DNA from: Haplodiscus bocki
Taxonomy: Eukaryota
DNA length: 64,000 bases
NCBI GenBank assembly: GCA_965655095.1
Contig: OZ296656.1
Coordinates: forward strand, 39,742,001 to 39,806,000
Direction: 5' to 3'
Shown here one piece after another: positions 8,101-45,000 of the stretch. The notes below the pieces were generated by a model. That model was not told the origin of the DNA and did not search any database. It saw nothing but the letters and a program-made list of their open reading frames with translations. The translations under genes and the position numbers were made by a program. The first letter of the stretch is position 1, and the number at the start of each line of letters is the position of its first letter.

Positions 8101-8142
8101 ACGACCACAATCTTAATGCTGTGCAAGTAAGTGTTTATACAT

Positions 8143-9754: not shown

Positions 9755-10817
9755 CAAAACTGAAAAGAAGCAAGCCCGTTGGTAGCTGGCCAATTTATTC
9801 TGCCTCAGCCTAAATTGCAGTGTTCTTGGTAGTATCCTATGAGTGAGTACTCTCTTTACACTTATGCTGCACATACCTCTGGAAGTAGATTTTCATTTAT
9901 ATTAGACTTCGTCAATTGAGAAAAATCCAAGTTTCTGCAAAAAAATTGTGATTTTTCAAAACCACCAGTGATAATCTTCAATAGAAAAGAATGAAACATG
10001 TTTTGGAAAACATTCACGATCATTGATTGCTGTTTATTTTTCTTATTACCTTTATATACTGTAACATATGTTGTACCAGAAGTTGCAACTTCCCTTTTGG
10101 TCTTCTACTCTGATGAAAACATACCAATCAAACGAGCAATTTTTGAATAAACAGAAGTTTGTTTCCGACAAAAGTTAGCAAATAAATGGAAGAGAAATTT
10201 GCACAAAATGTGCGTTCTTTTCACGCAAATTTTGCCAATTGCAATCATGTTTTTATCGATGTTTTTTTCACGTTTGAAAAATTTTTATTGAAATCATAAA
10301 GTGCTTCTCTGGACACGTAGGAAGCAGTTCTGACAACGCTGTTGAGAATTTTGCGCTCAGAATCTGAAAAAATAGACAAATTTTTTCTCCTGGGAAGAAG
10401 TCATCAAATATCTTTTCTGGACACGTAGATTGCAGCTTGGAGAAACCTGTTGGAAAGTTTTAGCCAACAGTTTGACAATTTTTGGTCGAACTCCAAAAAG
10501 GAATATGAAAATATATTTTTCACACCAAAAACTCAGAACGAAACTCAGGATGAAAAATTGCAGTATTGACAACCGCTCCGTGAGTTAATCTTACCGAAAG
10601 TCCTAGAAACTTAGACTGAAAGTCCAATAAAGTTCACGAATTGACAAATTGTTTTATTAACAATTTTTTGTTGAAAAGAATGCTCGATAAGAGGGTAGTT
10701 TTCTATAAACACGCTTTCATCCTTTTAGGATGCATCTTTAACAAAGTTGTTGAGCTGGAAAAATGCCAGTGCTAGCCGGCCAGGTTGTTTAAAAACCATT
10801 ATTAGTAGATGCTAACA
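9755..10817 (-). repeat. Right arm of the inverted repeat pair
   Basis: Collinear reverse complement of 8143-9195. Ends TAGATGCTAACA at 10817, beyond which similarity to the left arm stops. Confidence 0.85.
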
Positions 10818-13239
10818 CGAAGCGCAATCGCACTGGAATCGTTTCCCACAAGGCCGTACGGGATTGATAAATTGAACAAACAACAAATTTTCATGGCAGA
10901 GAAACCAGCTCTTGAGATAGAAAAGGTGTCATTGGAGATCCTGATGGAACAATTCAAGTCAATCTCAGGAGTAAAACCGGAGATTTTTTAGTGTGAGAGT
11001 CGTGTTGTAGTATGAAAGCCTCATCTTAAGACTTCATAAAAAAAAAAATCAAAATTGTTGATTTTGGTGGGGATGATTTGAAAAATAGAGATTTGTCCGA
11101 ACTAAGCTCACCTGTGCCGCTTTTGGCCTATCAAGATTTCAATTCCGGTGTGGAAATCATATTTTGAAATGTTTAGAAACGAACACTTCGTTTTAGGTAT
11201 AAATCCCTCGAGATTGACACCCTGATGGAAACAAAATGAGTTAAGTAGATTTGGTAAATTATAAGTTTGGATATCGAGATGCTTCTAGACTAAAAGCACT
11301 TTCTGGCATTTCCGGTCCGTCTAGATTCCACAAAAGGTTACAAACTCAACAATTTCCTGATCAAATGTTATAATTCAAGTTGGAAGCATTAGGTTGAGAC
11401 TTTGAGAAAGGATATAAACTTGGTTGTTGTGATAGAGACCGTGTTAGAAAATTGAGAAGACTCCTTGTTTAGAAACAGTTCTTGACTTTTTTGGATTATC
11501 AAAAGTCAAATGGAATCAGCGGATAAAACAGTTGTTACTAAAAAAGCCTCAAACGCAAAAACGTTTCTACTACGACTTTGGGGGAAGAAATTAAAACCTG
11601 TAGTTCCGGAATCAGATGGTTTATAATGACCAAAAAAATCAAAAGTGATAGCAAATTTTTGAACTTTCGAAGTATCAAGTTTCTGATGCCAAGAGAAAAA
11701 TCAACTTTGACTGGCCAATCAACCTCCAAAAGTTTAAAGTTATCGGCAGACACCAAGATGAATTATAGCAAGTCTCTAATTACGGGAAATTGATAGTTTC
11801 AAAATGGAGATTCAACAATAAAAACATTTATTTTTTGGGATGTCGGATTGTCAATCTTCCAATTCAAAGATCAGAATACACAATATTTTCATCGAGATTT
11901 TTCTTCGACTAAAAGATTTTTGAATGAAACCTGGACAGAAGAACTGAAATCTGTAGTTATGGATGAGAATTCATATTGAGTTTGAAAAATGAGAAAAAAT
12001 ATCGCTGGGAAGTTTTCTTGAAAATTTCGGACTATCAGGATGATGATGCAATGAACAAAATCAAGAGTTTCTTACCTCAACACTCCTGTAAAGCAATCAC
12101 GTAAGAAGTTGAGAACTTGATGCAGGACTTGCAACTCGCAAAATCTGTGGATTACATGTTTGAATAGCGAGGGAGTTCAAAAAAACACCTTTTGGGAGTT
12201 TTGGACTGTCAAGTCACTAATGTTCTAACCACAGATAAACAATTCAACTATCGAAAAACTCTCCACAAGTGGACAGTTTCTGAGTCCGACCCTGATGGAT
12301 TAATATAATTTTATAAAGCTTTTTTTGAAAACTTCTGACTAACAGGATTCTGATGCAATGATCAAGAATAACAGTTTTTCACATGAATACTTTTCTACAA
12401 GAATCATACATTAGAATGAAAACTTCACGCGGCGATTCGAACCGGTAAGGTTTGAGGAATACATGTGTGAATAACGGGCGAAATCAATAAAAACAGCACC
12501 TTTCGAAACATTTGGATTGTAAAGATTCTTTTAAAACTAACAAACACAAACAATTCTATCATAGAAAGGCTCTTTTCATCTGTACATTTTCCGATTCGGA
12601 ACCTGTTGGAAGAAAAGTTAACGTTGGAAAGTGTTCTTTGGAACATTCTCCCTGTCAGTATTCTGAGGCAAGAAAGAAAAGACAATGTTTTTTTCGACTA
12701 CTTGTCTACAAATTCTCTGTTTTCGATTGAGATCTTGATGGGAGAAAATGAACATGTAGTGGTTGAGAAATGAGAGCTTGAATATCGATTCATTTGAAAA
12801 AAAAGCTTCTTTTGGTACATTTGGACTGTCACAAATCTGCTGAATGGATCGAAACAAAAAATTCTGTACTTGAATTGTCTGCCAGAAATGGAATGTCTCC
12901 GATGGAGACCTTGGTTGAAGAGCGCATAACTGTTGTTGATGTTAAATATGAGTTTTTATTTGGAGACACATGATTATTACTAAACAATTTCTCATTTTGC
13001 TGACTATGGGGATTTTGACGGGAGGAAAAGACGAACTTTTTCCAGAAAAATTGTTCACCACCAGCAGAAAGCATCCGATTGTGAACTAGATGAAAGATTT
13101 GAACGCGAACTTTTGCGGAAAAATGAGTTTCAAAATAAACGGAATTCGGTACTAGTTGCAATTTTTGGCAATGTCTCAATGTCGATATTACGATACGTTG
13201 TGAAGCAGCAGGCTCTTTTTCAAAAAAATCCCTTTTGTG
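9800..13239. repeat. AT-rich head block, copy 1 of 3
   Basis: Direct repeat of 25993-29369 (offset 16195, e.g. ORFs 10809/27004) and of 39298-42034 (offset 28840, ORFs 10809/39649). Confidence 0.95.
11960..12900 (+). pseudogene. Decayed ORF made of about three tandem ~310-bp (~103-codon) units, head copy 1
   Basis: TTGGA(C/T)TGT at 12201, 12512 and 12821; GATGCAATG/GAGGCAAG at 12045, 12352 and 12665; AAACAATTC at 12237 and 12548. Units align at protein level with conservative changes but contain stops and frameshifts. Confidence 0.6.
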
Positions 13240-16200
13240 CCTTGGCGAAAGAGCACGCAGAAAAAGCCCCTGCGATTGAGCGCACATAGATGGCCCTGCA
13301 GAAAAGCGCGCACAAAAAGCTCCAGCTAAGAAGCACAAGGATAAAACCCCCGTGAAGTAGCGAACGGAAAAGACTCCGGCGAAAGAGCGCATCGAAAGAA
13401 TTTGGAAAAAGATTGCACGGAAAAAGTTCTTTTGAAGAAGCGCACGGAGAAAGATACTGCAAAAGAAAGCGTCAAAAAAGATTCTCGAATAGAGCGCCCG
13501 GATAAAGCCCACGCAAAAGAGCGCACGGGAAAGGCTCCGGCAAAAAAGCGCACGGAGGATGCACTGCAAAAGGCGTGCGGAAAAATCTCAAACGAATGAG
13601 CGCACGGAATATCCTCTTGCAAATAAACGCACGGAGAAAGCCCCTGGGAAAAAGTCCGTGGAAAAGTTTCCGCGAAAAGGCGCAGAGAAAAAGCCCCGGC
13701 GGAAAAGAGCAGCAAAACACCCGCGGATAAAAAACGCGCGGAAAGTGCTCCTACGAAGGTGCGCATGGAAAGAAACTCGTGCAGAATTTCGCGGGGAAAA
13801 ATCCGCGGCATTAGAGTGCACACAGAGTGCCCAGCAAAACACGGTGATCTTCTGTAAAAGCACGGTGCACGGTGAGGGCTCAAAAGAGAGAACGCAGAGA
13901 AAAACACCCGCAAAACAGCGCATGGAAAAAGACCGCAAAAAACCCCGGGAAAAATAACAGAAAACACCTACAAATGAGTGCACATAAACGGCCCTGCAAG
14001 AAAGCACGGAAAAACCTCAAGCCTCAAGTGTAGTAGTGCAGGGAAAAAGCCCCCGCGAAAGAGCGCAGACAGAGGACCCTGCAAAAAACGCGCTAAATTG
14101 GTTCAAACGAGAGAGCGCAAGCACAAAACCTCCGCGAAGAAGCGCGCAGAAATAGCCCTTGCCAAGGAACGCATGGAAAACACCCCGGGAAAAAAGTGCC
14201 CGGGGGAAGCCCCTGTGAAAAAGCCAACAGCGAAAGAGCCCGTGGAAAATGCCCATTCGAAAAAGTGCACGGAAATAAAGCCCCGCAGAAGAGCGTACTG
14301 AGAAACCCCCATAAAAAACCCATAGAAAAAGCACCTGTAAAAAAACACACAAAAAAGTCCTCACAAAAGAGCGCAGGTAAATTCGCTGCGAATGAGTGCA
14401 AAAATACGGCCATACGAAAAAACGCACGGAAAGGGCTCACGCGAAAAAGCGAAAGGCAAACGCCCTTCGCAAAAGCGCAGGGAAATCACCCGGCAAAAAG
14501 CGCACAGAAAAAACACTGCAAAAGAGCGCATGGAAATTGCCCAAGCGAATGAGTGCACAGAAACACAGCCACCGATGAAGAGTGCACGGAAAAAGTCCCT
14601 GCCAAAGAGCGTATTGAAAAATCCCCAGTGAAAACTGCATGGAAAAAGCCAGTGCGAAAAATTCCACTCGATAAAATCCACGGAAAAAGCACCTGTGAAA
14701 GAACGCACAACGAAATTCCTCACAAAAGGTCGCAGGTAGAATCTCCAGCGGAAGAGCGCAGTGAAAAAACTGCCAAAGAGCGCACTGAGAAGCTCTCGCA
14801 AAAAATCGAGCCGAAAAACACCTGCGAAACATTGCACTGAAAAATCCCTGCTAAAAAGAGCAGGGAAGAAACTTCCGTCAAGGAGAGCAAGAAAGTTACT
14901 GCGAAAGAGTGCACGGAAAATTTCCCGGCGAAAGAGCACTCACAGATAACGCAGGCGAAGGAGCGCTTGCGAAAAGCCCCGGCGAAAAAGCGCATGGATA
15001 AAATGATAATCCCCTGCCAAAGACCGCAGGGAGAAAGCCCCCGGGAAAAAATGAGCGCCAAAACAAACGCAAAAGATTGCACAGAAAAAAACCTGCAAAA
15101 AAACGCACGGGAGACGCCCCCACGGAAAAGCCCATGGAAAAACCCTTTTGAGAAAGCTCATGGAAAACTCCCCCATGAGAGAGCTCACTCAAGACGCCCC
15201 TGCGGAGAAATGCCGGGAAAAAAACGCTTGCAAAAAAGTGAAGGGAAGATACCCTTGTGAAAAAGCGCCTGGAAAAAGCCACTGCCTAGAAGCGTAGTAA
15301 AAAAGCACCCTGCAAGAAAATGCAAGGGTAAAACTGCCGTGAAACAGCGCAAGAAAATAAAACCGGTGAGAAAGCGCACCGAAAACACCCTTGCAAAAGA
15401 GTGCACAGAAAAAAAGCCCTTGTGAAAGAGCGCGCCGAACAAGGTCAAAAAAGGTCAACGAAAAAGTCCACGGAACAAGCTCCAATAAAGCGCGGGGAAT
15501 AGCCTCTGCGGAACGAGCGTACAAAAAAAAATGAACACTCTGGATCGCACTCGCAAAAACCTTATGAAGGAGGGCACGGAAAACGGCCACCTCGAAAGAG
15601 CACTCGGAAAAAGTTCCTGCAAAACAGAGCACGGAATATGCCCCAGCGAATTAAATCACATAGAAGGATTTGCAAAAAAGCGTTCAAAAAAGGCTCAAGT
15701 GAAAGATTGTTGAAAAAATCCCACGCGAAAGAGCACAAAGAAAACGCCGCTGCAAAAAACCACATGGAAAAAACCTCGTCGAACGAGCGCTCGGAAAAAA
15801 CTCAGCGAAAGAGCACACGTAACAAGCCCTTGGAAAAGAGTGCAAAAGGAAAGCTCTCGCGAAAGAGCAGATGGAAAAGACCCTGGTGAAAGAGTGCACC
15901 GATTGAGGGCACACAAAAAATACTGCAGGAAAGCACACTGCAAAAACCCTCGCAAAAAATTGCACGGAAAGAAACCCCTGCGAAAGAGCGCATGCAAAAA
16001 ACCACTGCAAAGAAGCGCACGGAAAAAATTCACGGGGATGAGCCCATGGACATCTCAGCTGCGAAAGACTGCACGCTAAAACACTCCCTCGAAAAAGGAA
16101 AAGATCTCCCCGCAAAAAAACTCTCGGAAAAAGCACTTGGGAAAAAGTGCACAAAAAATTCCCCCGCAAAAGAAAGTAGATAAAAAGTTCCTGCGAAAGA

Positions 16201-19200
16201 GCGCGCGGAGGAATCCCTTGTAACAGAGCGCTCGAAAAAAGCTAAGCGCAAAAGCGCACGGAAAAAGGCACTGCGAAAAAGCGTTAGGAAATAGCCCCAC
16301 GAAGGAGCTTATGGAACTCTCCTTTGCAAAAATGTGCAGGGCATAAGTGCCCCGTGAGAGAACCTGCCGAAAAGGCCACCGCGATGGAGCCCATTGAACT
16401 ATTCCTTGACAAAAAGTGCACGGTGGAAGCCCCGGAAAAAAGGCACCAAAAAGTTTCCGACGAGAGAGCGCATTGAAAACGACCCTGCGAAAAAGTAGAT
16501 TGAAACCGTCCATGCGAAAGAATGCACGGTGAAAATCTCTAGGAAAAAGCTCAAGGGAAAGTTCCTGCTAAAGAGCGCACACAGAATGGTTCTGTGGAAA
16601 AGTGCACGGAAGCAACGCTGAAAGAGTGCACCGGGAAAAACTCGGCAAAAAACCGCATGGAAAAACGACCCGCGAAAAAGCGCGGGAGATCACTTGAAAG
16701 AAGAGCGCTGGGTGTATGCCTCTGTGAAAAAGTGCACGGAAAGCGGCCCAGTGAAAAAGTGCCCGCAAAAATCCACTGCAAAAACACGCAGGGAAAAAGC
16801 CCTCGTGAAATAGCGCGCGGAAAAATCACTACGATGAAGCGCATGGAAAAAACCCCTGCTAAAAAGTGCAGTGAAAAAGTTACTGCAGAAGAGCGCACAG
16901 AAGGCCTGCACGACACGAGAGAACGCGTTGAAAACGCCCCAGCCAGAGAGTGCTTGGTAGAATCCCTTCCGACAGAGCTCAAGGAAAAACCTTTTGCAAG
17001 AAAACGCACAGGAGTAACTTTGCGAAGGAGCCCATTGAAATCGTCCGGGCGACAAATTGCCTGGAAGAAGTCGCCGGAAACGGACCGGAGAGAAAAGCTT
17101 TGCGGAAGAGCTTGCCAAAAAAGCTTCACGAAACATGGCACGAAAGGAAGCCACTGCTAAAAGGGCACGAAAAAAAACCTTGCAAAAAAGCGCACGCAAA
17201 AACTCACTGCAAAAAAGCGCCCGGAGGAGGCCCCTGGAGAAAGAATGCACCAAATAAAAAATCCCGCGGCAGAGCAATGAAAACTACCTTGCAAAAAAGT
17301 GCACGGGAAAAAAGCCCCGCGAAAAAGCTCACTGGACAAGCCGCTGCAAAGAAACACAGGGACACAAGAGCACCGAAGTTTCCTTGCTAACGAGTGCACT
17401 GAAGAGCCCCCCTAGAAAGGCCCTACAAAAAAACGTATCAAAAAAGTCTCACAGAAAAGCCCACGGAAAAAACACTTGGAAAAAAGGACACAAAAAGAAC
17501 GAGCCCCTGCGAAAGACCGCACGCGCAAGCCTATGCGGAGAAATACACGGAAAAATCCCCTGCAGAGAAGAGCACGGAAGAAGTCTATGCAAAAGAGCGC
17601 ACGCAGAAGATCACTGCAAAGCAGTGTACGGAAAATCCAGCGCTGGTGAACCCGTGGAAATTTATACTGCAACAGTGTGCGCGGGATAAAAGCTCTGAGA
17701 AACAGAGCACGGAACAAGCCCCTGCAAGAGAGGGCACATAATAATTTACTGCAAAAAAGCGCACGGAAACATCCATACGAAATAGCCCATGGAAATTTCC
17801 TCTGCCAAAGAGTGCACGGAGAAAGCCCCGGAGAAAAATGCACCAAAAAAACCCCCCGATGAAGCGCACTGAAAACGACCCTGCAAAAAACTTGGTGGAA
17901 ACCGTCCATGAGAGAGAATGCTTGGGGAAAAAGCCCAGGGCAAAAACCTTGCGAAAGAGCGCGCCGAGAGAACCCCCTCAGAAAACCTCACAGAAAAAAC
18001 AACTAATAAGTAGCCCACGAAGAAAAGCCATTACAAAGAGCGCACCAATAAATTGCCCGCAAGAAACGCTCGTAAACTCACCCTGCGAAAAAGCGCACGG
18101 CAAAAGCTCCCTGCGAAATAGGAGAATGAAAAAACCGCTGCAAGAAAAGGCTTGGAAGAAACCCTGGCAAAAAATTTCAAGGAAAATGTCCATGCCAATG
18201 AGTTCACGCAACATATACTAGTGAAAGAGCCCACGGGAAAAACCTAGCAAAAAAAGCGTGCGGGAATAGCCGCGCGATTGAGGGCACACAAAAACGTGTG
18301 CAGGAAAGCACACTGAAAAAACCTTATTGGAAAAAAACGCACGGAAAAACACCCCTGCGAAAGAGTGCATGCAAAAAACCACTGCAAAGTAGCGCACGGA
18401 AAAAGTTCATGGGGATGAGCTCATGGACAACTCCGCTGCAAAAGACTGCACGGTAAAACACTCCCTCGAAAAAGGAAAAAATCCACCTGCAAAAACACCA
18501 ACCGAAAAAGCACTTGCGAAAAAAAAGTACACGAAAAGTTCCCCTGCAAAAGAGAATAGATAAAAAGTTACTGCGAAAGAGCGCGCGCAAGAATCCCTCG
18601 TAACAGAGCGCTCGAATGAAGCTCAGCGCAAAAGCGCACGGAAAAATGCACTTCGAAAAAACGTTATGAAACAGCCCCCACGAAGGAGCTTATGGAACTC
18701 TCCACTGCAAAAAAGTGCAGGGTAAAAGTGCCCCGTGAGAGAACCTACCAAAAAAGCCACCGCGATGGAGCCCAATGAACTCTAACCTGACAAAAAGCGC
18801 ACGGAGGAAGCCCAGGAAAAAAGGGCAGCAAAAATTCTCCGACGAGAGAGCGCACTGAAAACGAACCTGCGAAAAAGTAGATTGAAACAGTCCATGCGAA
18901 AGAATACACGGTGAAAATCTCTAGGAAAAAGCTCAAGGTAAAATTCCTGCTAAAGAGCGCACAGAGAATGGTTCTGTGGAAAAGTGCATGGGAGCAACCT
19001 TAAAAAAACGCAATAAAACCACTGCAAAAGAGCGCACGGAAGTGGCTCCTGCAAAAAAACGCACGAAAAAAGTTCACGGGGATGAGCCCATAGATTTATC
19101 CGCTGCAAAAGAGTACACGGGAAAACGGTGCCACGAGTTAGAGCACGAAATTAGACGCCGCGAAAAAGCCCCTGTAACCTGTCGATGCCTAAAATCTCAC

Positions 19201-22200
19201 GGAATATGTCCCCGGGAATGATTGCACGGTAAAAACCTTGCAAAAGAGTATGCCGAGGAAGCTTCGCAAAAGAAGGCGCGGAAAAAAGGCCCTGCACAAT
19301 GGCACACGGCAAAAACCCCTGCGATATAGAGGTCACTGAAAAAGCCACTGCCAAGAGACACACGGACAATGCACCGCGAAAGCGTCCATGGAAATCGTCC
19401 ATGCTAACGAGTGCACAGAATAGGCCCCCGGGAAGGCCCTCTGAAAAAACGTACCGAGAAAACTTCACAGAAAAGCCCACGGAAAAAACACTTGGAAAAA
19501 AGGTCACAAAAAGGAGCGAGCGCCTGCGAAAGAGCTCACGGAAAAGCCTATGCGGAAAAACGCACAGAAGATGCCACGGCAGGAAAGCGCACGGAAGTAG
19601 CGCAAGCGAAAGAGTGCACGCAGAAAATCACAGCAAAGCAGCGTACGGAAAATCAAGCGCTGGTGAGCCCATGGAAATCTATGCTGCAAGAGTGTGCGCG
19701 GGATAAAAGCCCTGAGAAAGAGAGCACGGAGAAAGGCCTGCGAACTATCCCATGGTAATCTCCCCTGCCGAAGAGAGCAGAGAAAAAACCACTGCAAAAA
19801 AAGCGCAGGGAAAAAGCTCAGGGGGATGAGCCAATGGATATCTCCGCTGCAAAAAACTGCACGGTAAAACACTGCCTCGAAAAAAGAAAGAATCTACCCG
19901 CAAAAAAAACCACGGAAAAAGCACTTGCGAAAAAGTGCACAAAAAATTCCTCTGCAAAAGAGAGTAGATAAAAAGTTCCTGCCAAGGAGCGCGCGGAAGA
20001 ATCCCTCGTAACAGAGTGCTCGAAAAAAGCTCAGCGCAAAACCGCATGGAAAAAGGCACTGCGAAAAACCGTTAGGAAACAGCCCCAGCGAAGGAGCTTA
20101 TGGATATCTCCGTTGCAGAAAAGTGCATGATAAAGGCTCCCCAAGAGAGAGTGTACCGAAAAAGCCCCCGCGATGGAGCCCATTGAAATCTTCCCAGCAA
20201 AAAAGCGCACGGAGAAAGCCCCAGAAAAAATTGCACTAAAAAATCTCCAGCAAGAGAGGGCACTGAAAACGACCCTCCGAAAAATTGATGGAAACCGTCC
20301 ATGCGAAAGGTGCACAAGGGATGCCCCCGTGAAAAGCCCACGGGAAAATTCTTGTGAAGGAGAGTGCGGAAGAAGCTTTCTGAAAGCCGTCGTGAAAAAA
20401 ATCTCCTTCAAAAAAGCGCACTGCAAAAACTTCTGCGAAAGAGCGTGCCAAAAAAGCCACTGCAAAGAAGTGCACAGAAAAGGCTCCTGGGTATGAGCCG
20501 ACCGATATCTCCACTGCGAAAGAGTGCCGGAGAAGATAGCCCCACGAAAGAGAGCACGGAAAAAGCTGCGCGAAAAAGTCCAAAGGAAAAGCACATACAA
20601 AAAAGGCACGAAAAAAGACCCTACCAAAGAGTGCGGGTAAAAAGTTCCTGCGAAGAAACGCACAGACGAAACCCTCGCGAAAGAGCGCACAAAAAGCCCC
20701 CGCAAATGCTCCCATTGAAGTCTCCCCGGCAAAAAATTGCACGGAAATAGACCCGGAAGAAAATTGAACCAAAAATCCACCCCCGAGAGAGCGCACTGTA
20801 AACGAACCCGCGAAAGAGTCCATGGAAATCGTCCTTGCGGAAGTTTGCACGGAAGATGCACCGGGGAAAAACCAAACCCAAGGGAAAAGCCCTGCGAAAG
20901 AGCGTGCCAAAAAAGCTTTGCAAAAGAAAGCGCGGAAAAAAGGCCCTGCATAAGAAAGCGCAACGCAAAAACGCCTGCGATAGGGCGCCAGCAAAATTGA
21001 TCTGCCGGAAAGCGCACGGAGGAAAGCACTAAGTAAAACGCACGAAGAAGCTCCAGGGAAAGAGGGCACGCAAAAAACCGGTCCAAAGAAGCGCACGGAA
21101 AATGCTCCTGGGGATGAGCCCATAGATGCCTCCGTTGCGGAAGAGTGCCCGGGGAAACAGCCTCGCAAGAGACAGCACGGAAAAAGCCCCCGCAAAAAAT
21201 CGCTTGTAAGTTGTCCATGCAAAACAGTTCACAGAAGACGTCCCCAGGAAAGAGCCCATGGTAAAACAGATGCAAAGGAGCATGCAGAAGAAGCCCTGCG
21301 AAAGATGTTACGCAAAAGAGCTTCTACAAAAAAGTGCAAGAAAAAAGCCCCTGCGAAAGAGCTCATGAAAACCTCCGCTGCAAAAGAGTTCAAGAGATGA
21401 GAGACCCACGAAAGAGCGTACCAAAAAAGCCCGAGCGAAAGAGCCCATGGAAACCGTCCATGCGAAAAGATGAACGCAGGTGGCTCCAGAAAAAATGCGC
21501 CAAAAAGTTTCACGCGGGAGAGTGCTCTGAAAACGACCCTGCGAAAGGGTCCAGGGAAACCAACTATTCGAAATTTTGCACGGAAGTTGCACCGGTAAAA
21601 AAACCCATTGGAAAAGCCCTGCTCAAAAGCGCACCGCAAAGACCCCTGCGATAAGGCATCCGGAAAATGGTTCTGCGAAGACGCGCGCGGAAAATGCTCC
21701 TGGGGATGAGCCCATAGATGCCTCCGTTGCGGAAGAATGCCCGGGGAAACAGCCTCGCAAGAGACAGCACGGAAAAAGCCCCCGCAAAAAATCGCTTGTA
21801 AGTTGTCCATGCAAAACAGTTCACGGAAGACGTCCCCAAGAAAGAACCCATGGTAAAAGAGATGCAAAGGAGCATGCAGAAGAAGCCCTGCGAAAGATGT
21901 TACGCAAAAGAGCCTCTACAAAAAAGTGCAAGGAAAAAGCCCTTGCAAAAGAGCGCACGGAAATTGCCCCTGCGAACAAACGCACGCAAAGAAGTTCAAG
22001 GGGAAGCGCCCATGGACATGTCGGCTGCGAAAGAGTACACGGGAAAACACCACCACGAGTTAGAGCACGGAAATAGACGCCGCCAAAAAGCCCCTGTAAA
22101 CTGTCGATGCCTAAAAAACCACGGAATAGGTCCCCGGGAAGGCCCTCTGAAAAAAAGTACCGAAAAAACTTCACAGAAAAGCCCACGTAAAAAACACCTG

Positions 22201-25200: not shown

Positions 25201-25992
25201 GATGCCACGGCAGGAAAGCGCACGGAAGTAGCGCAAGCGAAAGAGTGCACGCAGAAAATCACTGCACAGCAGCGTACGGAAAGTCAAGCGCTGTTGAGCC
25301 CATGTAAATCTATGCTGGAAAGCGCGAGATAAAAACCCTGAGAAAGAGAGCACGGAGAAGGCCCCAGAAAAACTGCACCTAAAAATCCCCCGCAGAAATG
25401 CCCACAGAAAAAACACCTGTGAAGGAGCCAACAAAAAAGTCATTACAATGAGGGCAGTTGAAACACTGCTGCGAAAAAGTGCACGGAAAACATCTGTGGA
25501 AGATGGAAAAACCCACTGCTAACAAGCGCACTGAAAAAAACCCTATGAAAAAGCGCGCAGAAAAAGCCAAGACAAAGAGCGTACCAATGAGTTGCCCGCG
25601 AGGAAGGCACTCAAACTCACCCTGCGAAAAGGCGCACGGAAAAAACTCCTCGCGAAAGAACGCAAAGAAAAAGCCGCTGCGAAAAAAGTCTTTGAAGAAA
25701 CCCTTGCGAAAAAACCCGTGGAATTTGTGCATGCGAATCAGTTCACGCAATATTTCCCAGACAAAGAGTCCACGAGAAAAGCCTGGTGAAGCAGCGTGCG
25801 GAAAAAGCCTCCCGAACGAAGGTACACAAAATCTTGTGCAGGAAAACAAACGGAAAAATCCCTTGCAAAAAAACGCACGGAAAAAAAACTGCGAAAGAGC
25901 GCATGCAAGAAGCCACTGCAAAGAAGCGCAGGGGAAAAGCTCACCGGTATGAGACCATGGATATCTCCGGTGCGAAAGACTGCACGGTAAAA
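13240..25992 (+). repeat. 27-bp satellite array 1 (divergent monomers)
   Basis: Continuous head-to-tail variants of CCTGCGAAAGAGCGCACGGAAAAAGCC (10 A, 8 C, 8 G, 1 T), e.g. 16190-16330 parses into 26-27 bp units. Translations give the recurring PAKERTEKA, LRKSARKKP and CERAHGKSP motifs. Confidence 0.95.
19420..24850 (+). repeat. Two tandem ~2.71 kb copies (~100 monomers) within array 1
   Basis: Constant offset 2707-2710 between near-identical stretches (ORFs 20031/22738, 20173/22880, 20737/23444, 21821/24531). Confidence 0.9.
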
Positions 25993-35300: not shown

Positions 35301-38300
35301 ACGGATTTGGCTCCTGCAAAAAGACGCACGCGAAAAGTTCAGTGGGTTGAGCCCATGTCTCCGCTGCGAAAGACTGCACGGTAAAAGTCTGCACGGAGGT
35401 TACACGCCTGAAAAGACCCATTGGAAAAGCCCTGCGAAATAGCGTACCGAAAAACTTTTGGGATATAGGGCGCCGGAAAAAAAGCCTTGCTCAAAAGCGC
35501 ACCGCAAAAACCCCTGCGGTAGGGCAGCCGCAAAATGGTTCTGCAAAGAAGCGCACGGTGATTAGCCCTAAAAAAGCGCGCACGGAAAAAACCCCGCCGG
35601 AAGAGCGCACGCAAGAAGCCACTACAAAGAAGCGCACGGAAAAAGCTCCTGGGGATGATCCCATGGATGCCTACGTTGCAAAAAAGTGCCGAGGAAGCAG
35701 CCTCGCGAGAGTTAGCACAGCAAAATCCCTCGCAAAAAAACACTTGGAATCGTCCATGCGAAAAAGTTCACGGAAGATGTCCCCAAGAAGGAGCCCGTGA
35801 TAAAAGCCCTGCCAAAGACCATTCAGACGATGCCCTGCAAAAAGATGTTACGCAAGAAATCATCTGCAAAAAACAGCCAGGATAAAACCCCTGCGGGAGA
35901 GCTCATGGAACTCTTCGCTACAAAAGAGTTCAAAATATAGGGGCCCCACGACTGAGCGTACCAAAAAGGCCCCAGCGAAGGAGCCCATGGAAGTCTCCCT
36001 CGCAAAACAGTCCGCGGAGAAGGCCCCGGAAAAAAAGTGCACAAAAAAATCTCCTGCGAGAGAGCGAACTGAAAACAGCCATGCGAAAGAGTCCACGGTA
36101 ACTGTCCATGCGAAAGAGTGCTCGCAAGATGCCCCCCAGAAAGAATGCACGGAAAAAGCCCCGCGAAAGTGTTCATGGAAATCGTCCGTTCAAGAAAGTG
36201 CACGGAAGATGCTCCTGCAAAAAAAGCGCACAAATAAAGGCACCGCGGTTGAGCCCATGGAAAAATCGGCTGCCACGGAGTGTGCGAGAGAAGAAAACTG
36301 CACAAAATAGCACCAAAAAGCCCCTCTGAACAGAACAATCAAAAATACACTGCGAAAATGCACATGGAAGGGCCCCTGCGAAGAAGCCCATGGAAAACTT
36401 CTCTGCAAAAGAGTGAACGAAGAAAGCCCCGGAAGAATGTGAACCGAAAACCTCCCAACATGAGAGAGCAATGAAAACGACCTTGCGAAAGAGTGCACTG
36501 AAGCTGCACTCGCGCAAAATCCGACGGAACAGCCCTGCGAAAGTGCCTACCAAAAAAACCCCCGCGAAGAAGCCCATGAATTTCTCCCCCGCGAAAACTG
36601 CAGGGAGAAGGCCCCGAAAAAAGTGCACCGAAAAAACTTCCGCGAGAGAGCGCGCTAAAAACGACACTGCGAAAAAGTCCATGGAAACCGTCCACGCAAA
36701 AGAATGCACGAGAGATGACCCCGGGAAAAGGCTCACGGGAGAATCTCTGAAAAAAAGCGTGCCGAAAAAGATTCCTGAAAGAGGGCTTGGAAATAAACCC
36801 ACGTACAAAAGCGCACGGCAAAAACCGCTGCGAAAGAGAGTACGAAGAATGGTTCTGCACAAAAGTGCACGAGAGAAGCTTTGCAAAAAAGCGCTAAGAA
36901 AAAGTCCATGCGAAAAAGCGCACGCAAGAAGACATTGCATGGAAGCGAACCGAAAACGCTCGTGCAATCAGCTCATGGACATCTCCGCTGTCAAAAAGTG
37001 CCCGGGGAAACAGCCCCGCAAAAGAGAGCACGGCAAAACCCCAACAAAAAAACTAATGGAAATCGTCCATGCGAAAGAGTTCACGGAAGATGTCTCCAAG
37101 AAAAAGGCCATGGTAAAAGCCCCGCCAAAGACCATGCAGACGAAGCCCTACGAAAGATGTTACGCAAAATGCCTCTGTAAGAAACAGCCAGGATAAAACC
37201 CCTCCGGGAGAGCTCATGGAACTCTCCGCTACAAAAGAGTGTAAAAAATGGCTCCACGACAGAGCGTACCAAAAAAGCCCCAGCGAAAGTGCCCAAGGAA
37301 GTCTCCCTCGCAAAAAAGTCCACAGAGAAAGCCCGAAAAAAAGTACACAAAAAAAATCTCCTGCGAGAAAACGAACTGAAAACCGCCAAGCGAAAGAGTC
37401 CATGGTAACCGTCCATGCGAATGAATGCACGGAAAATGCTCCTGCGAAAAAGCGCACAAATAAGGGCCCAGTGGTTGAGCCCATGGAAAAATCCTTGCCA
37501 ACGAGACCAGGGGACTCTCCAGTGCCAAAAAGTGCCCGGAGACGGCTCCGGGGAAAGAATGCACAAAAAAACTTCCCGCAGCAGAGCTCTGAAAACTACC
37601 TTGCAAAAAAGTGCACTGAAAAGCCCCTGCAGAAAGGACACGGAAGACTTCTATGCAAAAGGGCGCACGCAGAACAACACTGCAAAGCAGTGTACGGAAA
37701 ATCCAGCGCTGGTGAACACGTGGAAATTTATACTGCAACAGTGTGCGCGGTATAAAAGCCCTGAGAAACAGAGCACGGAACAAACCCCTGCAAGAGAAGG
37801 CACATAATAATCTACTGCAAAAAAGCGCACGGAAACATCCATACGAAATAGCCCATGGAAATTTCCTCTGCCAAAGAGTGCACGGAGAAAACCCCGGAGA
37901 AAAATGCAACAAAAAATCCCCCCGAAGAAGCGCACTGAAAACGACCCTGCAAAAAACTCGGTGGAAACCTTCCATGAGAGAGAATGCTTGGGGGAAAAGC
38001 CCAAGGCAAAAACTTTGCGAATGAGTGCGCCGAGAGAACCCCCTCAGAAAAGCTCACAGAAAAAACAACCAATAAGAAGCCCACAAAAAAAGCCATCACA
38101 AAGAGCGCACCAAAAAATTGCCCGCGAGAAACGCTCGCAAACTCACCCTGCGAAAGAGCGCACGACAAAACCGCTGCAAAAAAAGGCATGGAAGAAACCC
38201 TGGCGGAAAAACCAAAGAAAATTGTCCATGCGAATGAGTTCAAGCAAGATATCCCAGTGAAAGAGCCCACGGGAAAAGTCATGCGAAAGAGCGTACGGGA

Positions 38301-39297
38301 GTAGTCGCGCGATTGAGGGCACACAAAAATTTGTGCAGCAAAACACACGGAAAAAACCCCTGCAAAAGGACGCACGGAAAAAAACCCCTGCCAAAGTGTG
38401 CATGCAAAAAACCCAAAAAACCACTGCAAAGAATCGCACGGAAAAACCTCACGGGGTTGAGCCCACGGACATCTCCGCTGCGAAAGACTGCACGGTAAAA
38501 CACTCCCTCGAAAAAGGAAAGAATCACCCCGGAAAAAAACCCAGGGGAAAAGCACTTGCGAAAAAGTGCACGAAAATTTCCCCTGCAAAAGAGAGCTGAT
38601 AAAAGGCTCCTGCGAAATAGCGCGCGGAAGAATCCCTCGTAACAGGGCGCTCCAAAACTTGTCAGCGCAAAAACGCACGAGAAAAGGCACTGCGAAAAAG
38701 CGTTGGGAAATAGTCCCCATGAAGGAGCCTATGGAACTCTCCCTTGCAAAAAAGTGCAAGGTGAAAGGTCCCCGTGAGAGAACCTACCGAAAAAGCCACC
38801 GCGATGGAGCCCCTTGAACTCTTCCCTGACAAAAAACACGGAGGAAATGCAGGAAAAAAATGCACCAAAAAGTCTCCGACGAGAGAGCGGACTGAAAACG
38901 ACCCTGCGAAAAAGTAGATTGAAACCGTCCATGCGAAAGAATGCACGGTGGAAATCTCTGGTGAAATGCCCAAAGGAAACATCGTGCTAAAGAGCGCACA
39001 CAGAATGGTTCTGTGGAAAAGTGCACGGAAGCAACCCTTTAAAAAACGCTTTGAAAAACCACTGCTAAAGAGCGCACATAAATGGTCCCTGCAAAAAAAC
39101 GCACGCGAAAAGTTCACGGGGATGAGACCATGGATATATCCGCTGCGGAAGAGTACACGAGAAAACAGCGCCAGGAATTAGAGCACGGAAACAGACGCCG
39201 CGAAAAAACCCGTGTAAATTGTCGATGCCTAGGAAATCACGGAAGATGTCCCCGGGAAAGATTGCACGGTAAAAGCCTTGCGAAGGAGCATGTCGAG
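29370..39297 (+). repeat. 27-bp satellite array 2
   Basis: Same monomer and orientation; opens with the same ordered monomer series as arrays 1 and 3 (ORFs 14392/30167/43109). Internal duplications 31830-33097 ~ 38030-39297 (offset ~6201) and ~35845 ~ 37157. Confidence 0.95.
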
Positions 39298-42034
39298 ATT
39301 TAGCCAACAGTTTGACAATTTTTGGTCGAACTACAGGAAGGAATATGAATATATATTTTTTACATAAAAAACTCAGAACGAAACTCAGGATGAAAAATTG
39401 CAGTATTGACAAAAGCTCCGTGAGTTAATCTTACCGAAAGTCCTAGAAACTTAGACTGAAAGTCCAATGAAGTTGACGAACGGACAAATTGTTTTGTTAA
39501 CAATTTTTTGTTGAGAAGAATGCTCGATAAGAGGGTAGTTTTCTATAAACACGCTTTCATCCATTTAGGATGCATCTTTAACAAAGTTGTTGAGCTGGAA
39601 AACTGCCATTGCTAGCCGGCCGGGTTGTTTAAAATCCATTGACAGTAGATGCTAACACGAAGCGCAATTGCACTGCAAGCGTTTCCCACAAGGCGGTACG
39701 TAATTGATAAATTGAACAAACAACAGTTTTTCATGGAAGAGAAACCAGCTCTTGAGATAGAAAAGGTGTCATTGGAGATCCTGATTGAACAATTCAAGTC
39801 AATGTCAGGAGTAAAACGGGAGATTTTTTGGTGTAAGCGTCGTGTTGTAGTGTGAAAGCTTCATTTTAAAACTTCATAAAAAAACTCAAAGCTGTTGTTT
39901 TTGGTGGGGATGATTTGAAAATTAGAGATTTGTCCGAAATAAGCTCACCTGTGCCGCTTTTGGCCTATCAAGATTTCATTTCCGGTGTGGAAATCATACT
40001 TTGAAATATTTAAAAACGAACATTTCCTTTTAGGTATAAATCCATATGGATTGACACCCTGATGGAAATAAAATGGGTAGGTAGATTTGATAAGTTAGGA
40101 GTTTGAATATCGAGGTGCTTCTAGACTAAAAGCACTTTCTGGCATTTCCGGTCCATCTAGATTCCACAAAAAATTACAAAATCAACAATATCCTGATCAA
40201 ATGTTATACTTCAAGTTGGAAGCATTAGGTTGAGACTTTGTAAAAGGATATCATTTTGGTTGTTATGATAGAGCCCGTGTTAGAAAGTTGAGAAGAGTCC
40301 TTGTTTAGAAACAGTTCTTGACTTTTTTGGATTATCAAAAGTCAAACGGAATCAACGGATAAAACAGTTGTTATTAAAAAAAGCCTCAAACGCAAAAACG
40401 TTTCTACTACGACTTTGGGGGAAGAAATTAAACCTGTAGTTTCGGAATCAGATGGTTTATAATGACCAAAGAAATCAAAAGTGATAGCATATTTTTGAAC
40501 TTTTGAAGTATCAAGTTTCTGATGTGAGGAAAAATGTCAACTTTTACTGGCCAATCAACCTACAAAAGTTTAAAGTTATCGGCAGACACCAAGATGGATT
40601 ATAGCAAGCCTCTAGTTACGGGAAATTGAGAGTTTCAAAATGGAGATGCAACAGTAAAAATATTTTTTTTTGGGATGTCGGTTTGTCAACCTTGCATTTC
40701 AGAAATCAGAATACACAATACCTTCATCGAGATTTTTCTTCGACTAAAACGTTTTCGAATGAGACCTTGACGGAACAACTGAAACCTGTAGTTATGGATG
40801 AGAACTGAGGTTGAGTTTCAAAAATGAGAAAACTTATCACTGGGAAGTTTTGCCGGAAAATTTGGAATATCAAGATTGTAATTCAATGAACAAAATCAAC
40901 AGTTTCTTACCTCAACATTCCTTTAAAAAAATCACGTACGAAGTTGAGAACTTGATGCAGGACTTACAGCTCGCAAAGTCTGTGGAATACATTTTTGAAT
41001 AGAGAGGGAGTTAAAAAACACCTTTTGAAAGTTTTGAACTGTCAAGTCTCTAAAATTCTCTACAAGTGGACAGTTTCCGATTCCAACCCTCTTGGAAAAA
41101 AATAATTTTCTAAAGCTTTTTTGTCAAAATTTCTGACTAACAGGATTCTGAGGCAATGATCAAGATTAACGGTTTTTCACCTGAATACCTTTCTACAAGA
41201 ATCATATATTAGAATGAAAACTTCACGCGGGAATTCAAACCGGTAAGTTTTGAGGAATACATGTGTGAATAACGGGCGAAATCAATAAAAAAAGCACCTT
41301 TCGAAACATTTGGATTCTAAAGATTCTTTTAAAACTAACAAACACAAACAATTCTATCATAGAAAGGCTCTTTTCGTCTGTACATTTTCCGATTCGGAAC
41401 CTGTTGGAAGAAAAATTGACATTGGAAAGTGTTCTTTGGAACATTCTCACTGTCAGTATTCTGAGGCAAGCAAGAAAAGACAATGTTTTTTCGACTACTT
41501 GTCTACAAATTCTCTGTTTTAGATTGAGATCTTGATGGGAGAAAATGAACATGTAGTGGTTGAGAAATGAGAGCTTGAATATCGATTCATGTGAAAAAAA
41601 AGCTTCTTTTGGTATATTTGGACTGTCACAAATCTGCTGAATGGATCGAAACAAAAGATTTTGTATTTGAATTGTCTGCCGGAAATGGAATGTCTCCGAT
41701 GGAGACCTTGGTTGGAGAGGGCATACCTGTTGTTGATGTTAAAAATGAGTTTATAATTAGAGACACATGATTATTATTAAATAAATTCTCATTTTCTGAC
41801 TATGGGGATTTTGATGGGAGGAAAAGACTAAAATTTTTCAGAAGACCTAGTCACCACCAACAGAAGGCATCCGAATGTGAACTATATGGAAGATTTGAAC
41901 GCGAACTTTTGCGGAAAAATGAGTTTCAATATAAACGGAGTTCAAAACTAGTCGAAATTTTTGGCAATATCTCAATTTCGATATTACAATACGTTGTGAA
42001 ACAGCAGGCTCTTTTTAGAAAAAATCCTTTTTGT
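39298..42034. repeat. AT-rich head block, copy 3 (5'-truncated)
   Basis: TAGCCAACAGTTTGACAATT at 39301 matches 10461, so the first ~660 bp of copy 1 are missing. Interspersed-repeat arm ends at 39657; 310-bp modules lie at ~40790-41700. Confidence 0.95.
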
Positions 42035-45000
42035 GCCATGGCGAAAGAGCGCACAAAAAAGGCCCCTGTAAAATGGCACATGGAAAAAGCCACGGCGAAA
42101 CGGCGCACTGAAAAATCCCGGACAAAAGAGAGCACAAAATAAACCCCTGCGACTGAGCGCACATAGATGGCCCTGCAAGAAAACGTGCACAAAGAGCTCC
42201 AGCGAAGAAGCAGAAGGAAAGAACCCCCGTGAAGTAATGAAGGGAAAAGACCCCGGCGAAAGAGTGCCTCGAAAGAATTTTCGCCCGGATAAAGCCCACG
42301 CAAAAAAGCGCACGGGAAAGGCTCCGGCGAAAAAGCGCACGGAGGATGAACTGCAAAAAAGCGCGCGGAAAAATTTCAAACGATTGATCGCCCGGAATAT
42401 CCTCATGCAATTAAACGCACGGAGAAAGCCCCTGCAAAAAACTGCAGAAAAAGCCCCTGGGAAAAAAACCTTGGAAAAGTTCCCGCGAAAAGGTGCAAAG
42501 AAAAAGCTCCGGCGAATGAGAGCACCAAAAAAGCGGGGAAAAAGCCGCGGTGATAGAACGCACACAGAGTGTCCAGCAAAACGATGCACGGGGAGGGCTC
42601 AAACGAGAGAGCGCAGAGAAAAACACCCGCCAAACAGCTCATGGAAAAAGACCGCAAAAAAACCCTCGAATAAATAACAGAAAACCCCTACAAATGAGTG
42701 CACATAAACGGCCCTGAAAAAAAAGCGCGGAAAAACCTCAAGCTTAGTTGTGCGGGGAAAAAAGCCCCCGCGAAAGAGTGCAGACAGAGGGTCCTGCAAA
42801 AAAACGCGCCAAATTGGATCAAACGAGAGAGCGCAAGGATAGAACCCCCGCGAAGTGTCGCCCAGAAATGGCCCTTGCCAAGCAACGCATGGAAAACACC
42901 CCGGCAAAAAACGCATGGTGGAAGCCCCTGTGAAAAAGCCAACAGCGAAAGAGCCCGTGGAAATTGCCCATGCGAAAGAGTGCACGGAAATAAAGCCCCG
43001 CAGAAGAGCGTACTGAGAAAGCCCCCGTGAGAAAACCCATAGAAAAAGCACCTGTAAAAGAACACACAAAAAAGTCCTCACAAAATAGCGCAGGTAAATT
43101 CGCTGTGAATGAGTGCAAAAATTCGGCCATACGAAAAAACGCACGGAAAGGGCTCACGCGAAAAAGCGAAAGGCAAATGCCCTTCGCAAAAGCGCACGGA
43201 AATCACCCGGCAAAAAGCGCACAGAAAAAACACTGCAAAAGAGCGCATGGAAATTGCCCAAGCGAATGAGTGCACAGAAACACAGCCACCGATGAAGAGT
43301 GCACGGAAAAAGTCCGTGCCAAAGAGCGCATTCAAAAATCCCCAGTGAAAACTGCATGGAAAAAGCCACTGCGATGGAGTGAATTGAAAAATTCCACTCA
43401 AGAAAACCCACGGAAAAAGCACTTGTGAAAGAACGCACCACGAAATTCCTCATAAAAGATCGCAGGTAGAATCTCCAGCGGAAGAGCGCTCTGAAAAAAC
43501 TGCCAAAGAGCGCATTGAAGAAGCCCCCGCAAAAAAGCGAGCCGAAAAACACCTGCGAAACATTGCATTAAAAAAGTCCCTGCTAAAGATAGCAAGAAAA
43601 TCACTGCGAAAGAATGCACGGAAAAAATCCCGGCGAAAGAGCGCTCAGAGATAACCCAGGCGAAGGAGCGCTTGCAAAAAGCCCCGGCGAAAAAGCGCAT
43701 GGATAAATTCCCTGCGATTAAACGCAAATATACGTCGCTGCAAAAAAACGCACGAAAAAGGCTCAAGATGAATAGCCCAAGGAAAAACCCGAACCCCAAG
43801 AAAAGCACAGGGAAGAAACCAAATGAAAGCAGTCATCAAAAAGACCCCAGCAAAAACGCTTAGAAGTTAACTGCCAAAGTGTTCGTGGAAATTGCCCAAG
43901 CGAAAGAGTGCACAAACTTAAAGCCCCTGCCAAGGAGCGAACGCAAGAATCCCCTCTGAGAAAACGCACCGAAGAAGCCCCTGCGAAGCAATGCACCGAG
44001 GAACTCCACGCGACCAAGCCCACGGAAAAAGCACCTGTTAAAAAGCGCACCGAAAATTTTCTCACAGAAAGTGCAGGTTAAAACCTCCTGCGAATGAGCA
44101 CACGGAAAGGAACTGCGGAAGAGCGCACTGAAGAAGCCCCTTTGAAAGAGAACACGGGAAAAGCGCATGATAAACACTGCAAGGAATAATCCCGTGCCAA
44201 AGACCGCACGGAGAAAGCCGCCGGGAAAAAGCGAGCGCCATAACATATGCAAAAGATTGCACGGACAACAACCCTGCAAAAAACGCACGGGAGATGCCCC
44301 CACGGAAAAGCCCACGGAAAAAACCTTTTGAGAGAGCTCATGGAAAACTCCCCCATGAGAAAACGCACTCAAGATGCACCTGCGAAAAATTGCCGGGAAA
44401 GAAACGCCTGCAAAAAAGTAAAGGGAAAAAGCCCTTGTAAAAAAGCGCCTGGAAAAAGCCACTGCCTAGAAGAGTAGTAAAAAAGCACCCTGCAAGAAAA
44501 TGCAAGGGTAAAACTGCCGTGAAACAGCGCAAGAAAATAAAACCGGTGAGAAAGCGCACCGAAAACACCCTTGCAAAAGAGTGCACAGAAAAAAAGCCCC
44601 TGTGAAAGAGCGCGCCGAACAAGGTCAAAAAAGGTCAACGAAAAATCCACGGAACAAGCTCCAATAAAGCGCGGGGAATAGCCTCTGCGGAACGAGCGTA
44701 CATAAAAGTGAACGCTCTGGATCGCACTCGCAAAAATCTTATGAAGGAGGGCACGGAAAACGGCCACCTCGAAAGAGCACTCGGAAAAAGTTCCTGCATA
44801 ACAGAGCACGGAGTATGCCCCAGCGAATTAAATCACATAGAAGGATTTGCAAAAAAGCGTTCAAAAAAGGCTCAAGTGAAAGATTGTTGAAAAAATTCCA
44901 CGCGAAAGAGCACAAAGAAAACGCCGCTGCAAAAAACCACATGGAAAAAACCTCGTCGAACGAGCGCACGGAAAAAACTCAGCGAAAGAGCACACGTAAC

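What the first reader, a model, noticed from the sequence alone, without database searches (positions are those of the whole stretch)
9800..42100. Composite macro-repeat: a fixed AT-rich head always followed by the satellite from the same base
Seen: three head+array units with periods ~16.2 kb and ~12.6 kb. The head-to-satellite junction (CAGCAGGCTCTTTTT...TTTGTGCC(A/T)TGGCGAAAGAGC) is homologous in all three, and the following kilobases of monomers keep the same order. The satellite-to-head junctions differ (25993 vs 39298). So the head is not an insertion into the array; it is the array's fixed 5' neighbour and was co-amplified with it. Inference: either segmental tandem duplication of an array edge, or a satellite-bearing mobile element that seeds arrays. 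This is the best candidate for an undescribed system here.
Basis: partly seen in the sequence, partly recalled or inferred. Interest (0 to 1): 0.7.

Follow-up and report, generated by a model that had tools for sequence, protein, structure and literature searches.

The report
Triplicated edge of a satellite array
The left edge of a very long satellite-DNA block, made of some ordinary DNA plus a broken jumping gene, was copied in place twice together with 10-13 kb of the satellite; this is an ordinary local duplication, not a new mobile system that seeds satellites.

Summary
Three 'heads' (9799-13243, 25997-29374, 39298-42039; 88-100% alike) are each followed, from the same base, by a degenerate 27-bp satellite. 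The arrays stay colinear for 3-6 kb.

The head is not a unit of its own. It is about 1 kb of low-copy DNA plus the 3' 2.43 kb of a very common ~2.9-kb non-coding transposon. That transposon looks Helitron/Helentron-type and has ~176-bp inner repeats.

In 27 other copies the transposon runs on about 530 bp past the point where the satellite starts here. So the head-satellite joint is a break inside one transposon copy. That joint occurs exactly three times in the 1.5-Gb genome, all in this window.

The same satellite family forms arrays at 12 or more other loci without this head. Thirty-nine other loci of the transposon have no satellite beside them.

The two satellite-to-head joints differ and are non-homologous (0-2 bp microhomology). 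The third array runs at least 133 kb.

Verdict: two local tandem segmental duplications of an array edge, later blurred by sequence exchange between the units. The mobile-element reading is refuted.

The scan had already noted the same transposon family and transposon-junction tandem arrays elsewhere in this genome, but not this locus.

The parts
8143..9193 (-). Old inverted copy (73% identity) of head part A. Its homology stops within 4 bp of the transposon end, so it serves as an 'empty site'.
9799..10813 (+). Head 1, part A: low-copy local DNA. As a whole it is found only in this window. It holds two short dispersed-repeat pieces, at about 10183-10465 and 10685-10795.
10814..13243 (-). Head 1, part B: a copy of a dispersed ~2.9-kb non-coding Helitron/Helentron-like element with ~176-bp (here ~310-bp register) inner repeats. 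Its true orientation is minus. Its 3' end (palindrome plus ...CTTCGTGTT) lies at 10814. About 530 bp of its 5' end is missing at 13243.
13244..25996 (+). Array 1: degenerate 27-bp satellite. It contains an internal 2,707-bp duplication (about 19783-25200, 95-99.8%).
25993..25999 (.). Joint J1: array sequence joined to head position ~9799-9802. It is non-homologous, with no clear microhomology.
25997..29374 (+). Head 2: part A is 25997-27008 and the truncated transposon is 27009-29374. It is 98-100% identical to head 1 over 10661-11660 and 84-95% elsewhere.
29375..39297 (+). Array 2, colinear with the first ~6.7 kb of array 3.
39296..39300 (.). Joint J2: array sequence (to 39297) joined to head position ~10459. 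It is non-homologous, with 0-2 bp microhomology.
39298..42039 (+). Head 3, lacking the first ~655 bp of part A. The remnant of part A is 39298-39653 and the truncated transposon is 39654-42039.
   Evidence: exact short-read unitigs
42040..64000 (+). Array 3, the main array. Its first ~6 kb is old edge sequence. From about 48 kb it becomes a 2.41-kb higher-order repeat (with 1.8- and 1.26-kb variants) at 98-100% identity. It continues at least 111 kb beyond the window, to C9:39,917,067.

Best explanation
This is a local, three-fold tandem segmental duplication of the left boundary of a large satellite array (at least 133 kb). The inferred ancestral state was: low-copy DNA (part A), then one copy of a common Helitron/Helentron-like non-autonomous transposon lacking its 5' ~530 bp, then a 27-bp-period satellite. 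Two separate non-homologous events each copied a piece running from inside part A to a point 10-13 kb into the array. These events were end-joining or replication template switching; they were not unequal crossing-over between monomers. They gave head-array-head-array-head'-array. Afterwards the units diverged to 5-12%. They also exchanged tracts by gene conversion or unequal exchange, and each array underwent its own internal duplications. The interior of the main array was homogenised into a 2.41-kb higher-order repeat. Shown here: the anatomy, the uniqueness of the joints, the truncation of the transposon, and the two distinct rear joints. Inferred: the molecular mechanism of the joints and the order of events.
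For: 1. The head's last 541 bp has only three copies at 90% or more, all in this window. Every other hit is 68-76% identical and belongs to a dispersed family with at least 999 first-look candidates.
2. In 27 other copies the family sequence continues, conserved, beyond the point that equals 13243, and ends about 530-540 bp later.
3. The joint 21-mer TTTGTGCCWTGGCGAAAGAGC is exact at only three genome sites, all in this window. With 2 mismatches there are two more hits, against 1+1 for the reversed control.
4. A 301-bp probe across the joint finds the satellite half at 12 or more other loci on at least 8 chromosomes (for example C5:115.80-115.87 Mb). None of them carries the head half.
5. No satellite lies within the 206 kb fetched around 39 other loci of the transposon.
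6. Homology between the units crosses the joint and runs 3-6 kb into the arrays.
7. J1 and J2 have different breakpoints on both sides. Array paralogues align up to 0-3 bp from each joint and then diverge.
8. Identity is mosaic. Head 1 vs head 2 is 98-100% over 10661-11660 but 84-92% elsewhere. Array 1 vs array 3 is 97-99.5% over 15.2-16.6 kb, although their heads are about 91% alike.
9. Several 150-340-bp unitigs from three public runs match head 3 with no differences. One (X1 record 7, 41958-42130) bridges the head 3-satellite joint.
Against: No long read was available, so neither the 12-16-kb spacing nor J1 and J2 are confirmed independently of the assembly. For J2 only summed depth in its bin was seen, not a listed bridging piece. 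The public runs may come from the same sample as the assembly. The far end of array 3 could not be read, so I cannot exclude that the array sits inside the transposon copy rather than beside a deleted one. The order of the two events is blurred by later sequence exchange.
Confidence: 0.85

Rival explanations
1. The head is the 5' part of a mobile element that carries the 27-bp satellite and seeds arrays wherever it lands.
For: The head does contain a transposon of a kind known to carry tandem repeats. It has Helentron-type non-autonomous features, as in PMC7492417. The satellite family is dispersed over many loci.
Against: The joint is unique to this locus. It lies inside the transposon, not at its end. 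Other arrays lack the head. Thirty-nine other loci of the family lack the satellite. The rear ends of the three units differ and show no terminus.
Confidence: 0.02
2. The array was inserted into, or grew inside, one copy of the Helentron-like element. The missing ~530-bp 5' part would then lie at the far end of the array (133 kb or more away), and the whole would be a giant element-borne array whose left edge was later triplicated.
For: The break is clean and lies inside the element. Elements of this kind carry central repeats of variable length (PMC7492417).
Against: The satellite is unrelated to the element's ~176-bp inner repeats. It lies beyond them, in the element's 5' flank region. No other copy shows it. 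The far end was not examined.
Confidence: 0.06
3. Assembly artefact: one head-array edge was falsely repeated by the assembler, for example through haplotigs or mis-joined satellite reads.
For: Satellite regions are prone to misassembly. No long reads were available to me.
Against: The copies differ by 5-12% and by indels of 19-90 bp. Heads 2 and 3 are preceded by array sequence, not by the unique upstream DNA that a haplotig would carry. Exact unitigs specific to head 3 exist in three runs from two samples, and one bridges its satellite joint.
Confidence: 0.05
4. Rolling-circle (Helitron-type) concatemer: the units are head-to-tail products of read-through replication of a composite element.
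For: Earlier notes of this scan describe head-to-tail Helitron-like arrays in this genome. Each unit contains an element 3' terminus followed by flanking DNA.
Against: Concatemers share one identical junction, whereas here J1 and J2 differ on both sides. No element 5' end is present in any unit.
Confidence: 0.02

Closest known systems
Tandem segmental duplications at the edges of satellite arrays, as known from pericentromeric transition zones of primate chromosomes (own knowledge; not tested against a named case)
   Same: Unique or transposon sequence next to an array is copied together with part of the array. The edges are old and diverged while the array interior is homogenised into higher-order repeats. 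Exchange between paralogous units gives mosaic identity.
   Different: The scale is small (12-16 kb units, three copies). Whether this array is centromeric is unknown.
Cg_HINE, non-autonomous Helentrons carrying satellite-like central repeats in the Pacific oyster (PMC7492417)
   Same: The 2.9-kb family inside the head shares several features. It has a subterminal inverted repeat with an adjacent complementary repeat at one end, and the matching repeat followed by a palindrome at the other. It has central tandem repeats of variable number, shows no target-site duplication, and is present in very high copy number.
   Different: Its cargo is a ~176-bp repeat, not the 27-bp satellite. The copy here is truncated, and the satellite starts at the break. 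So the element is a bystander, not the carrier.
Tandem arrays grown from a transposon-host junction, noted earlier in this genome (s1-364327, s1-376449)
   Same: A truncated transposon plus neighbouring DNA is multiplied head to tail in place.
   Different: Those arrays have 20-34 copies with one shared joint. Here there are only three units with two different joints, and most of each unit is pre-existing satellite.

Membership tests
Local tandem segmental duplication | Copies are adjacent, in the same orientation, and confined to one locus | tested here: met
   Three copies, all on the + strand within 32 kb. There is no other copy at 90% or more in the 1.5-Gb genome.
Local tandem segmental duplication | Homology between units runs through internal landmarks (head, joint, array) in the same order | tested here: met
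   Colinear alignments cross the joint and run 3-6 kb into the arrays.
Local tandem segmental duplication | A novel breakpoint joint between the end of one unit and the start of the next | tested here: met
   J1 (25993-25996|25997) and J2 (39297|39298) are each non-homologous, with 0-2 bp microhomology.
Local tandem segmental duplication | Structure confirmed by reads independent of the assembly | tested here: inconclusive
   Only short Logan unitigs were available. They give exact matches to head 3, and one bridges the head 3-satellite joint. J1 and J2 were not shown to be bridged.
Satellite-carrying mobile element (HINE-like) as carrier of the 27-bp satellite | The same flanking sequence borders arrays at many unlinked loci | tested here: not met
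   Twelve or more other arrays match only the satellite half of the joint probe. The joint 21-mer is found only here.
Satellite-carrying mobile element (HINE-like) as carrier of the 27-bp satellite | Arrays lie between the two termini of the element | tested here: not met
   The head ends about 530 bp short of the family's end. The rear ends of arrays 1 and 2 abut the next head with no terminus. The far end of array 3 was not read.
Helentron-type non-autonomous element (HINE), for the dispersed 2.9-kb family inside the head | 5' subterminal inverted repeat with an adjacent complementary repeat | tested here: met
   In true orientation the start is ATTATTTTCCGTCGAAAA...TTTTCGAAAGGAAAATA. The 11-13-bp repeat TATTTTCCGTC(AA) recurs inverted at the other end in 4 of 6 copies. 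The hairpin folds at -9.3 kcal/mol (z = -2.7) in L034 and is weaker in decayed copies.
Helentron-type non-autonomous element (HINE), for the dispersed 2.9-kb family inside the head | 3' subterminal inverted repeat followed by a palindrome close to the end | tested here: met
   The end reads ...GACGGAAAATATCGCAGTGCGACTGCGCCTCTTGTT, with a 6-bp stem CGCAGT/ACTGCG located 9 nt from the end in L031. The stem is decayed in L034 and in the window copy.
Helentron-type non-autonomous element (HINE), for the dispersed 2.9-kb family inside the head | Central tandem repeats of variable copy number | tested here: met
   Degenerate ~176-bp repeats lie at L031:6566-7900. Copies differ by blocks of 300-600 bp.
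Helentron-type non-autonomous element (HINE), for the dispersed 2.9-kb family inside the head | No target-site duplication; insertion at TT | tested here: inconclusive
   No duplication is visible in six copies. The element ends in ...TTGTT. Compared with the inverted 'empty' arm, the boundary is placed within 4 bp. The copies are too diverged for base-exact ends.
Helentron-type non-autonomous element (HINE), for the dispersed 2.9-kb family inside the head | Termini shared with an autonomous Rep-helicase element | not tested
   Earlier notes report Helitron-like Rep-helicase genes in this genome. I did not compare termini.
Higher-order-repeat satellite | A short basic period plus a longer unit repeated at near identity | tested here: met
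   The basic period is 27 bp. A 2,409-2,411-bp unit repeats at 98-100% from about 52 kb onward and continues for at least 111 kb beyond the window.

The most novel reading that the evidence does not exclude
The array of 133 kb or more may sit inside the Helentron-like element, with the element's missing 5' part at the far end. This satellite family would then be spread, at least sometimes, as cargo of rolling-circle elements and could grow to chromosome-scale arrays from such a seed. The short (1-3 kb) arrays at a dozen other loci would be the unexpanded seeds.
Probability: 0.06. Interest if true: 0.5.

Novelty: new member of a known kind. Interest (0 to 1): 0.2.

Why it matters
Mostly this closes a lead: the 'composite macro-repeat' is not a new system. 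It has modest value as a clean, datable example of how a satellite array's edge evolves. The three heads act as barcodes. They show that the first 6-13 kb of the array are old and only patchily homogenised, while the interior is swept by a 2.41-kb higher-order repeat. They also show that edge duplications arise by non-homologous joints rather than by monomer-level unequal crossing-over. The work also documents one more very abundant Helentron-like non-autonomous family with inner tandem repeats in this genome.

Tried and rejected
- **Coding reading of the satellite.** Open stretches on both strands are only slightly longer than in shuffles, and the translations are low-complexity. Rejected.
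- **RNA genes.** Rfam finds nothing in the window at gathering score. There is no tRNA or SINE head in six transposon copies. A tRNA-like B-box impression in one ORF was not borne out.
- **Genes in 1-13240.** There are only five ORFs of 90 aa or more, all low-complexity, so no family search was run.
- **Tandem repeat finder on the whole window** at score 200 returned nothing. At score 50 it returned only short 25-27-bp patches, because the monomers are too diverged. Autocorrelation was used instead.
- **Genome search with a whole 2.41-kb higher-order unit** failed ('too many letters'). A 300-bp piece worked.
- **Flanks of ten other arrays.** I did not try to obtain those letters another way and ran all later genome searches with loci = 0.
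- **Looking beyond the window in earlier findings** was not possible.
- **Satellite derived from the transposon's own sequence.** No similarity was found. Rejected.
- **Rolling-circle concatemer.** Rejected because the two joints differ.

Full report
**Setting**

The window is C9:39,742,001-39,806,000 of an unnamed 1.5-Gb animal genome. Earlier notes of the scan disagree on whether it is a coral or an acoel, and I did not settle this. The first 13 kb are AT-rich (GC 31-38%). The rest alternates between 3-kb AT-rich blocks and long stretches with GC 47-51% and a strong excess of A over T (AT skew about +0.5).

BLAST of 8001-13300 against the window finds the head three times:
- 9802-13300;
- 25997-29431, at 94.9% identity over the first 2.3 kb and 90.1% over the rest;
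- 39296-42068, at 90.7-91.7%, starting only at the equivalent of 10456.

The offsets are 16,195 bp and about 12,650-12,680 bp. An alignment of the three head-to-satellite joints (A1) shows the same transition at the same base: 13243|13244, 29374|29375 and 42039|42040. Unit 3 has three extra monomers (81 bp) shortly after the joint.

Beyond the joint the arrays remain colinear:
- unit 1 with unit 3 over 13862-16623 = 42581-45800;
- unit 2 with unit 3 over 29819-35386 = 42760-48708.

Array paralogues can be followed to 25993 and to 39292-39297, after which the sequence switches to head position ~9799-9802 and ~10459 respectively, with at most 2 bp of shared letters.

**What the 'satellite' is**

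- It has a 27-bp period built from 13/14-bp halves. Self-match at lag 27 is only 0.44 against a background of 0.28, so the monomers are very diverged. This is why the tandem repeat finder sees almost nothing.
- It is not coding and matches no Rfam family.
- The first ~6 kb after each head are old sequence, with best paralogues at 87-95%.
- From about 48 kb, array 3 turns into a 2.41-kb higher-order repeat, with 1.8- and 1.26-kb variants, at 98-100% identity.
- A 300-bp piece of that unit recurs at 94-100% up to C9:39,917,067. Array 3 is therefore at least 133 kb long, and the heads sit at its left edge.
- The same 27-bp family occurs at 12 or more other loci on at least 8 chromosomes, including a block of 70 kb or more on C5.

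**What the head is**

It has two parts.

Part A (9799-10813) is found as a whole only in this window: in the three heads, and as an old inverted copy at 8143-9193 (73% identity). Only two short pieces of it belong to dispersed repeats.

Part B (10814-13243) belongs to a dispersed family with at least 999 first-look candidates and 68-76% identity. Six copies fetched with long flanks define an element of about 2.1-2.9 kb with sharp ends. It has:
- no ORF of note;
- degenerate ~176-bp inner tandem repeats of variable number;
- no visible target duplication;
- an 11-13-bp inverted repeat, TATTTTCCGTC / GACGGAAAATA, terminal at one end and 24 bp inside at the other;
- a hairpin next to each of these repeats.

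Read on the minus strand, this is the layout described for non-autonomous Helentrons (HINEs): a 5' subterminal repeat plus complementary repeat, central tandem repeats, and a 3' subterminal repeat followed by a palindrome (PMC7492417). I take the classification as likely (about 0.6), not proven, because the copies are old and the hairpins are weak in several of them.

The homology of the inverted arm 8143-9193 to part A stops within 4 bp of the element's 3' end. That arm therefore behaves as an empty site and confirms that 10814 is a true element end.

**The decisive point**

In 27 other copies the family sequence does not stop at the equivalent of 13243. It continues, well conserved between copies, for about 530-540 bp to the element's other end. 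The head-satellite joint is therefore a break inside one transposon copy, not the edge of any unit.

That break is unique:
- the head's last 541 bp has only the three local copies at 90% or more;
- a probe across the joint finds its head half nowhere else;
- the joint 21-mer is exact at only the three window sites in the whole genome, and its two 2-mismatch hits are at control level.

Conversely, none of 39 other loci of the family (206 kb fetched) has any satellite beside it.

**Mechanism**

Homology between the units spans head, joint and array, and the two rear joints differ on both sides and are non-homologous. The simplest history is therefore two separate tandem segmental duplications of the array's edge. 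One has breakpoints at ~9799-9802 and 25993-25996. The other has breakpoints at ~10459 and 39297. They were made by end-joining or by replication template switching, not by unequal crossing-over between monomers. This mechanism is inferred.

Later exchange between the units is evident from mosaic identity:
- head 1 vs head 2 is 98-100% over 10661-11660 but 84-92% in other 250-bp windows;
- array 1 vs array 3 reaches 97-99.5% over 15.2-16.6 kb = 44.4-45.8 kb, although their heads are about 91% alike.

Each array also has private changes, for example a 2,707-bp internal duplication in array 1. Overall divergence of 5-12% means the duplications are old. Because of the exchange I do not commit to an order of events.

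**Is it an assembly artefact?**

This is unlikely:
- the copies differ by 5-12% and by several indels of 19-90 bp;
- heads 2 and 3 are preceded by array sequence, not by the upstream DNA a haplotig would carry;
- Logan unitigs of three public runs from two samples match head 3 over 150-340 bp without a single difference;
- one unitig (X1 record 7, 41958-42130) bridges the head 3-satellite joint.

However, these are short contigs, possibly from the sample that was assembled. Long-read confirmation remains open.

**What I could not do**

This leaves one less ordinary reading alive at about 6%. In that reading the array lies inside the Helentron-like element, with the missing 5' part at its far end, and the satellite family is sometimes spread as cargo of such elements.

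**Verdict**

It is a triplicated edge of a large satellite array, marked by a broken copy of a common transposon. It is a new example of a known kind, and interest is low.

Noticed in passing
window 8143-9193 (-) and 9756-10817 (+): A 1.05-kb inverted repeat (73% identity, 562-bp spacer) lies just left of the array edge. The left breakpoint of the first duplication (9799-9802) lies about 45 bp inside the inner end of the right arm. The outer end of the right arm coincides with the transposon's 3' end, so the left arm acts as an empty site.
   Followed up: partly
L031:5765-8701, L034:6060-8982 and four more copies; window 10814-13243: A very abundant ~2.1-2.9-kb non-coding element (at least 999 candidates). 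It has ~176-bp inner tandem repeats, the subterminal inverted repeat TATTTTCCGTC, a 3' palindrome CGCAGT..ACTGCG and no target duplication. It looks like a Helentron-type non-autonomous element.
   Followed up: partly
window 48000-64000 and on to C9:39,917,067: Array 3 is at least 133 kb long and is built of a 2.41-kb higher-order unit with 1.8- and 1.26-kb variants at 94-100% identity. It lies in mid-chromosome, so it could be a centromere candidate. This was not tested.
   Followed up: partly
window 15006-16623 vs 44186-45800: This tract is 96-99.5% identical between arrays 1 and 3, much higher than the ~91% between their heads. It indicates recent gene conversion or exchange between non-adjacent units.
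   Followed up: partly
window 19783-25200: Array 1 holds a private 2,707-bp tandem duplication at 95-99.8% identity.
   Followed up: no
C5:115,803,288-115,872,835 and at least 11 other loci (coordinates): The same 27-bp satellite family forms one further large block (70 kb or more) and many short (1-3 kb) arrays on other chromosomes. Their flanks were not read.
   Followed up: no
window 39360 (run X4): One low-depth unitig leaves the reference after 39360 and continues with letters that resemble head position ~10415-10445. This could be a related dispersed repeat or a variant copy of part A.
   Followed up: no
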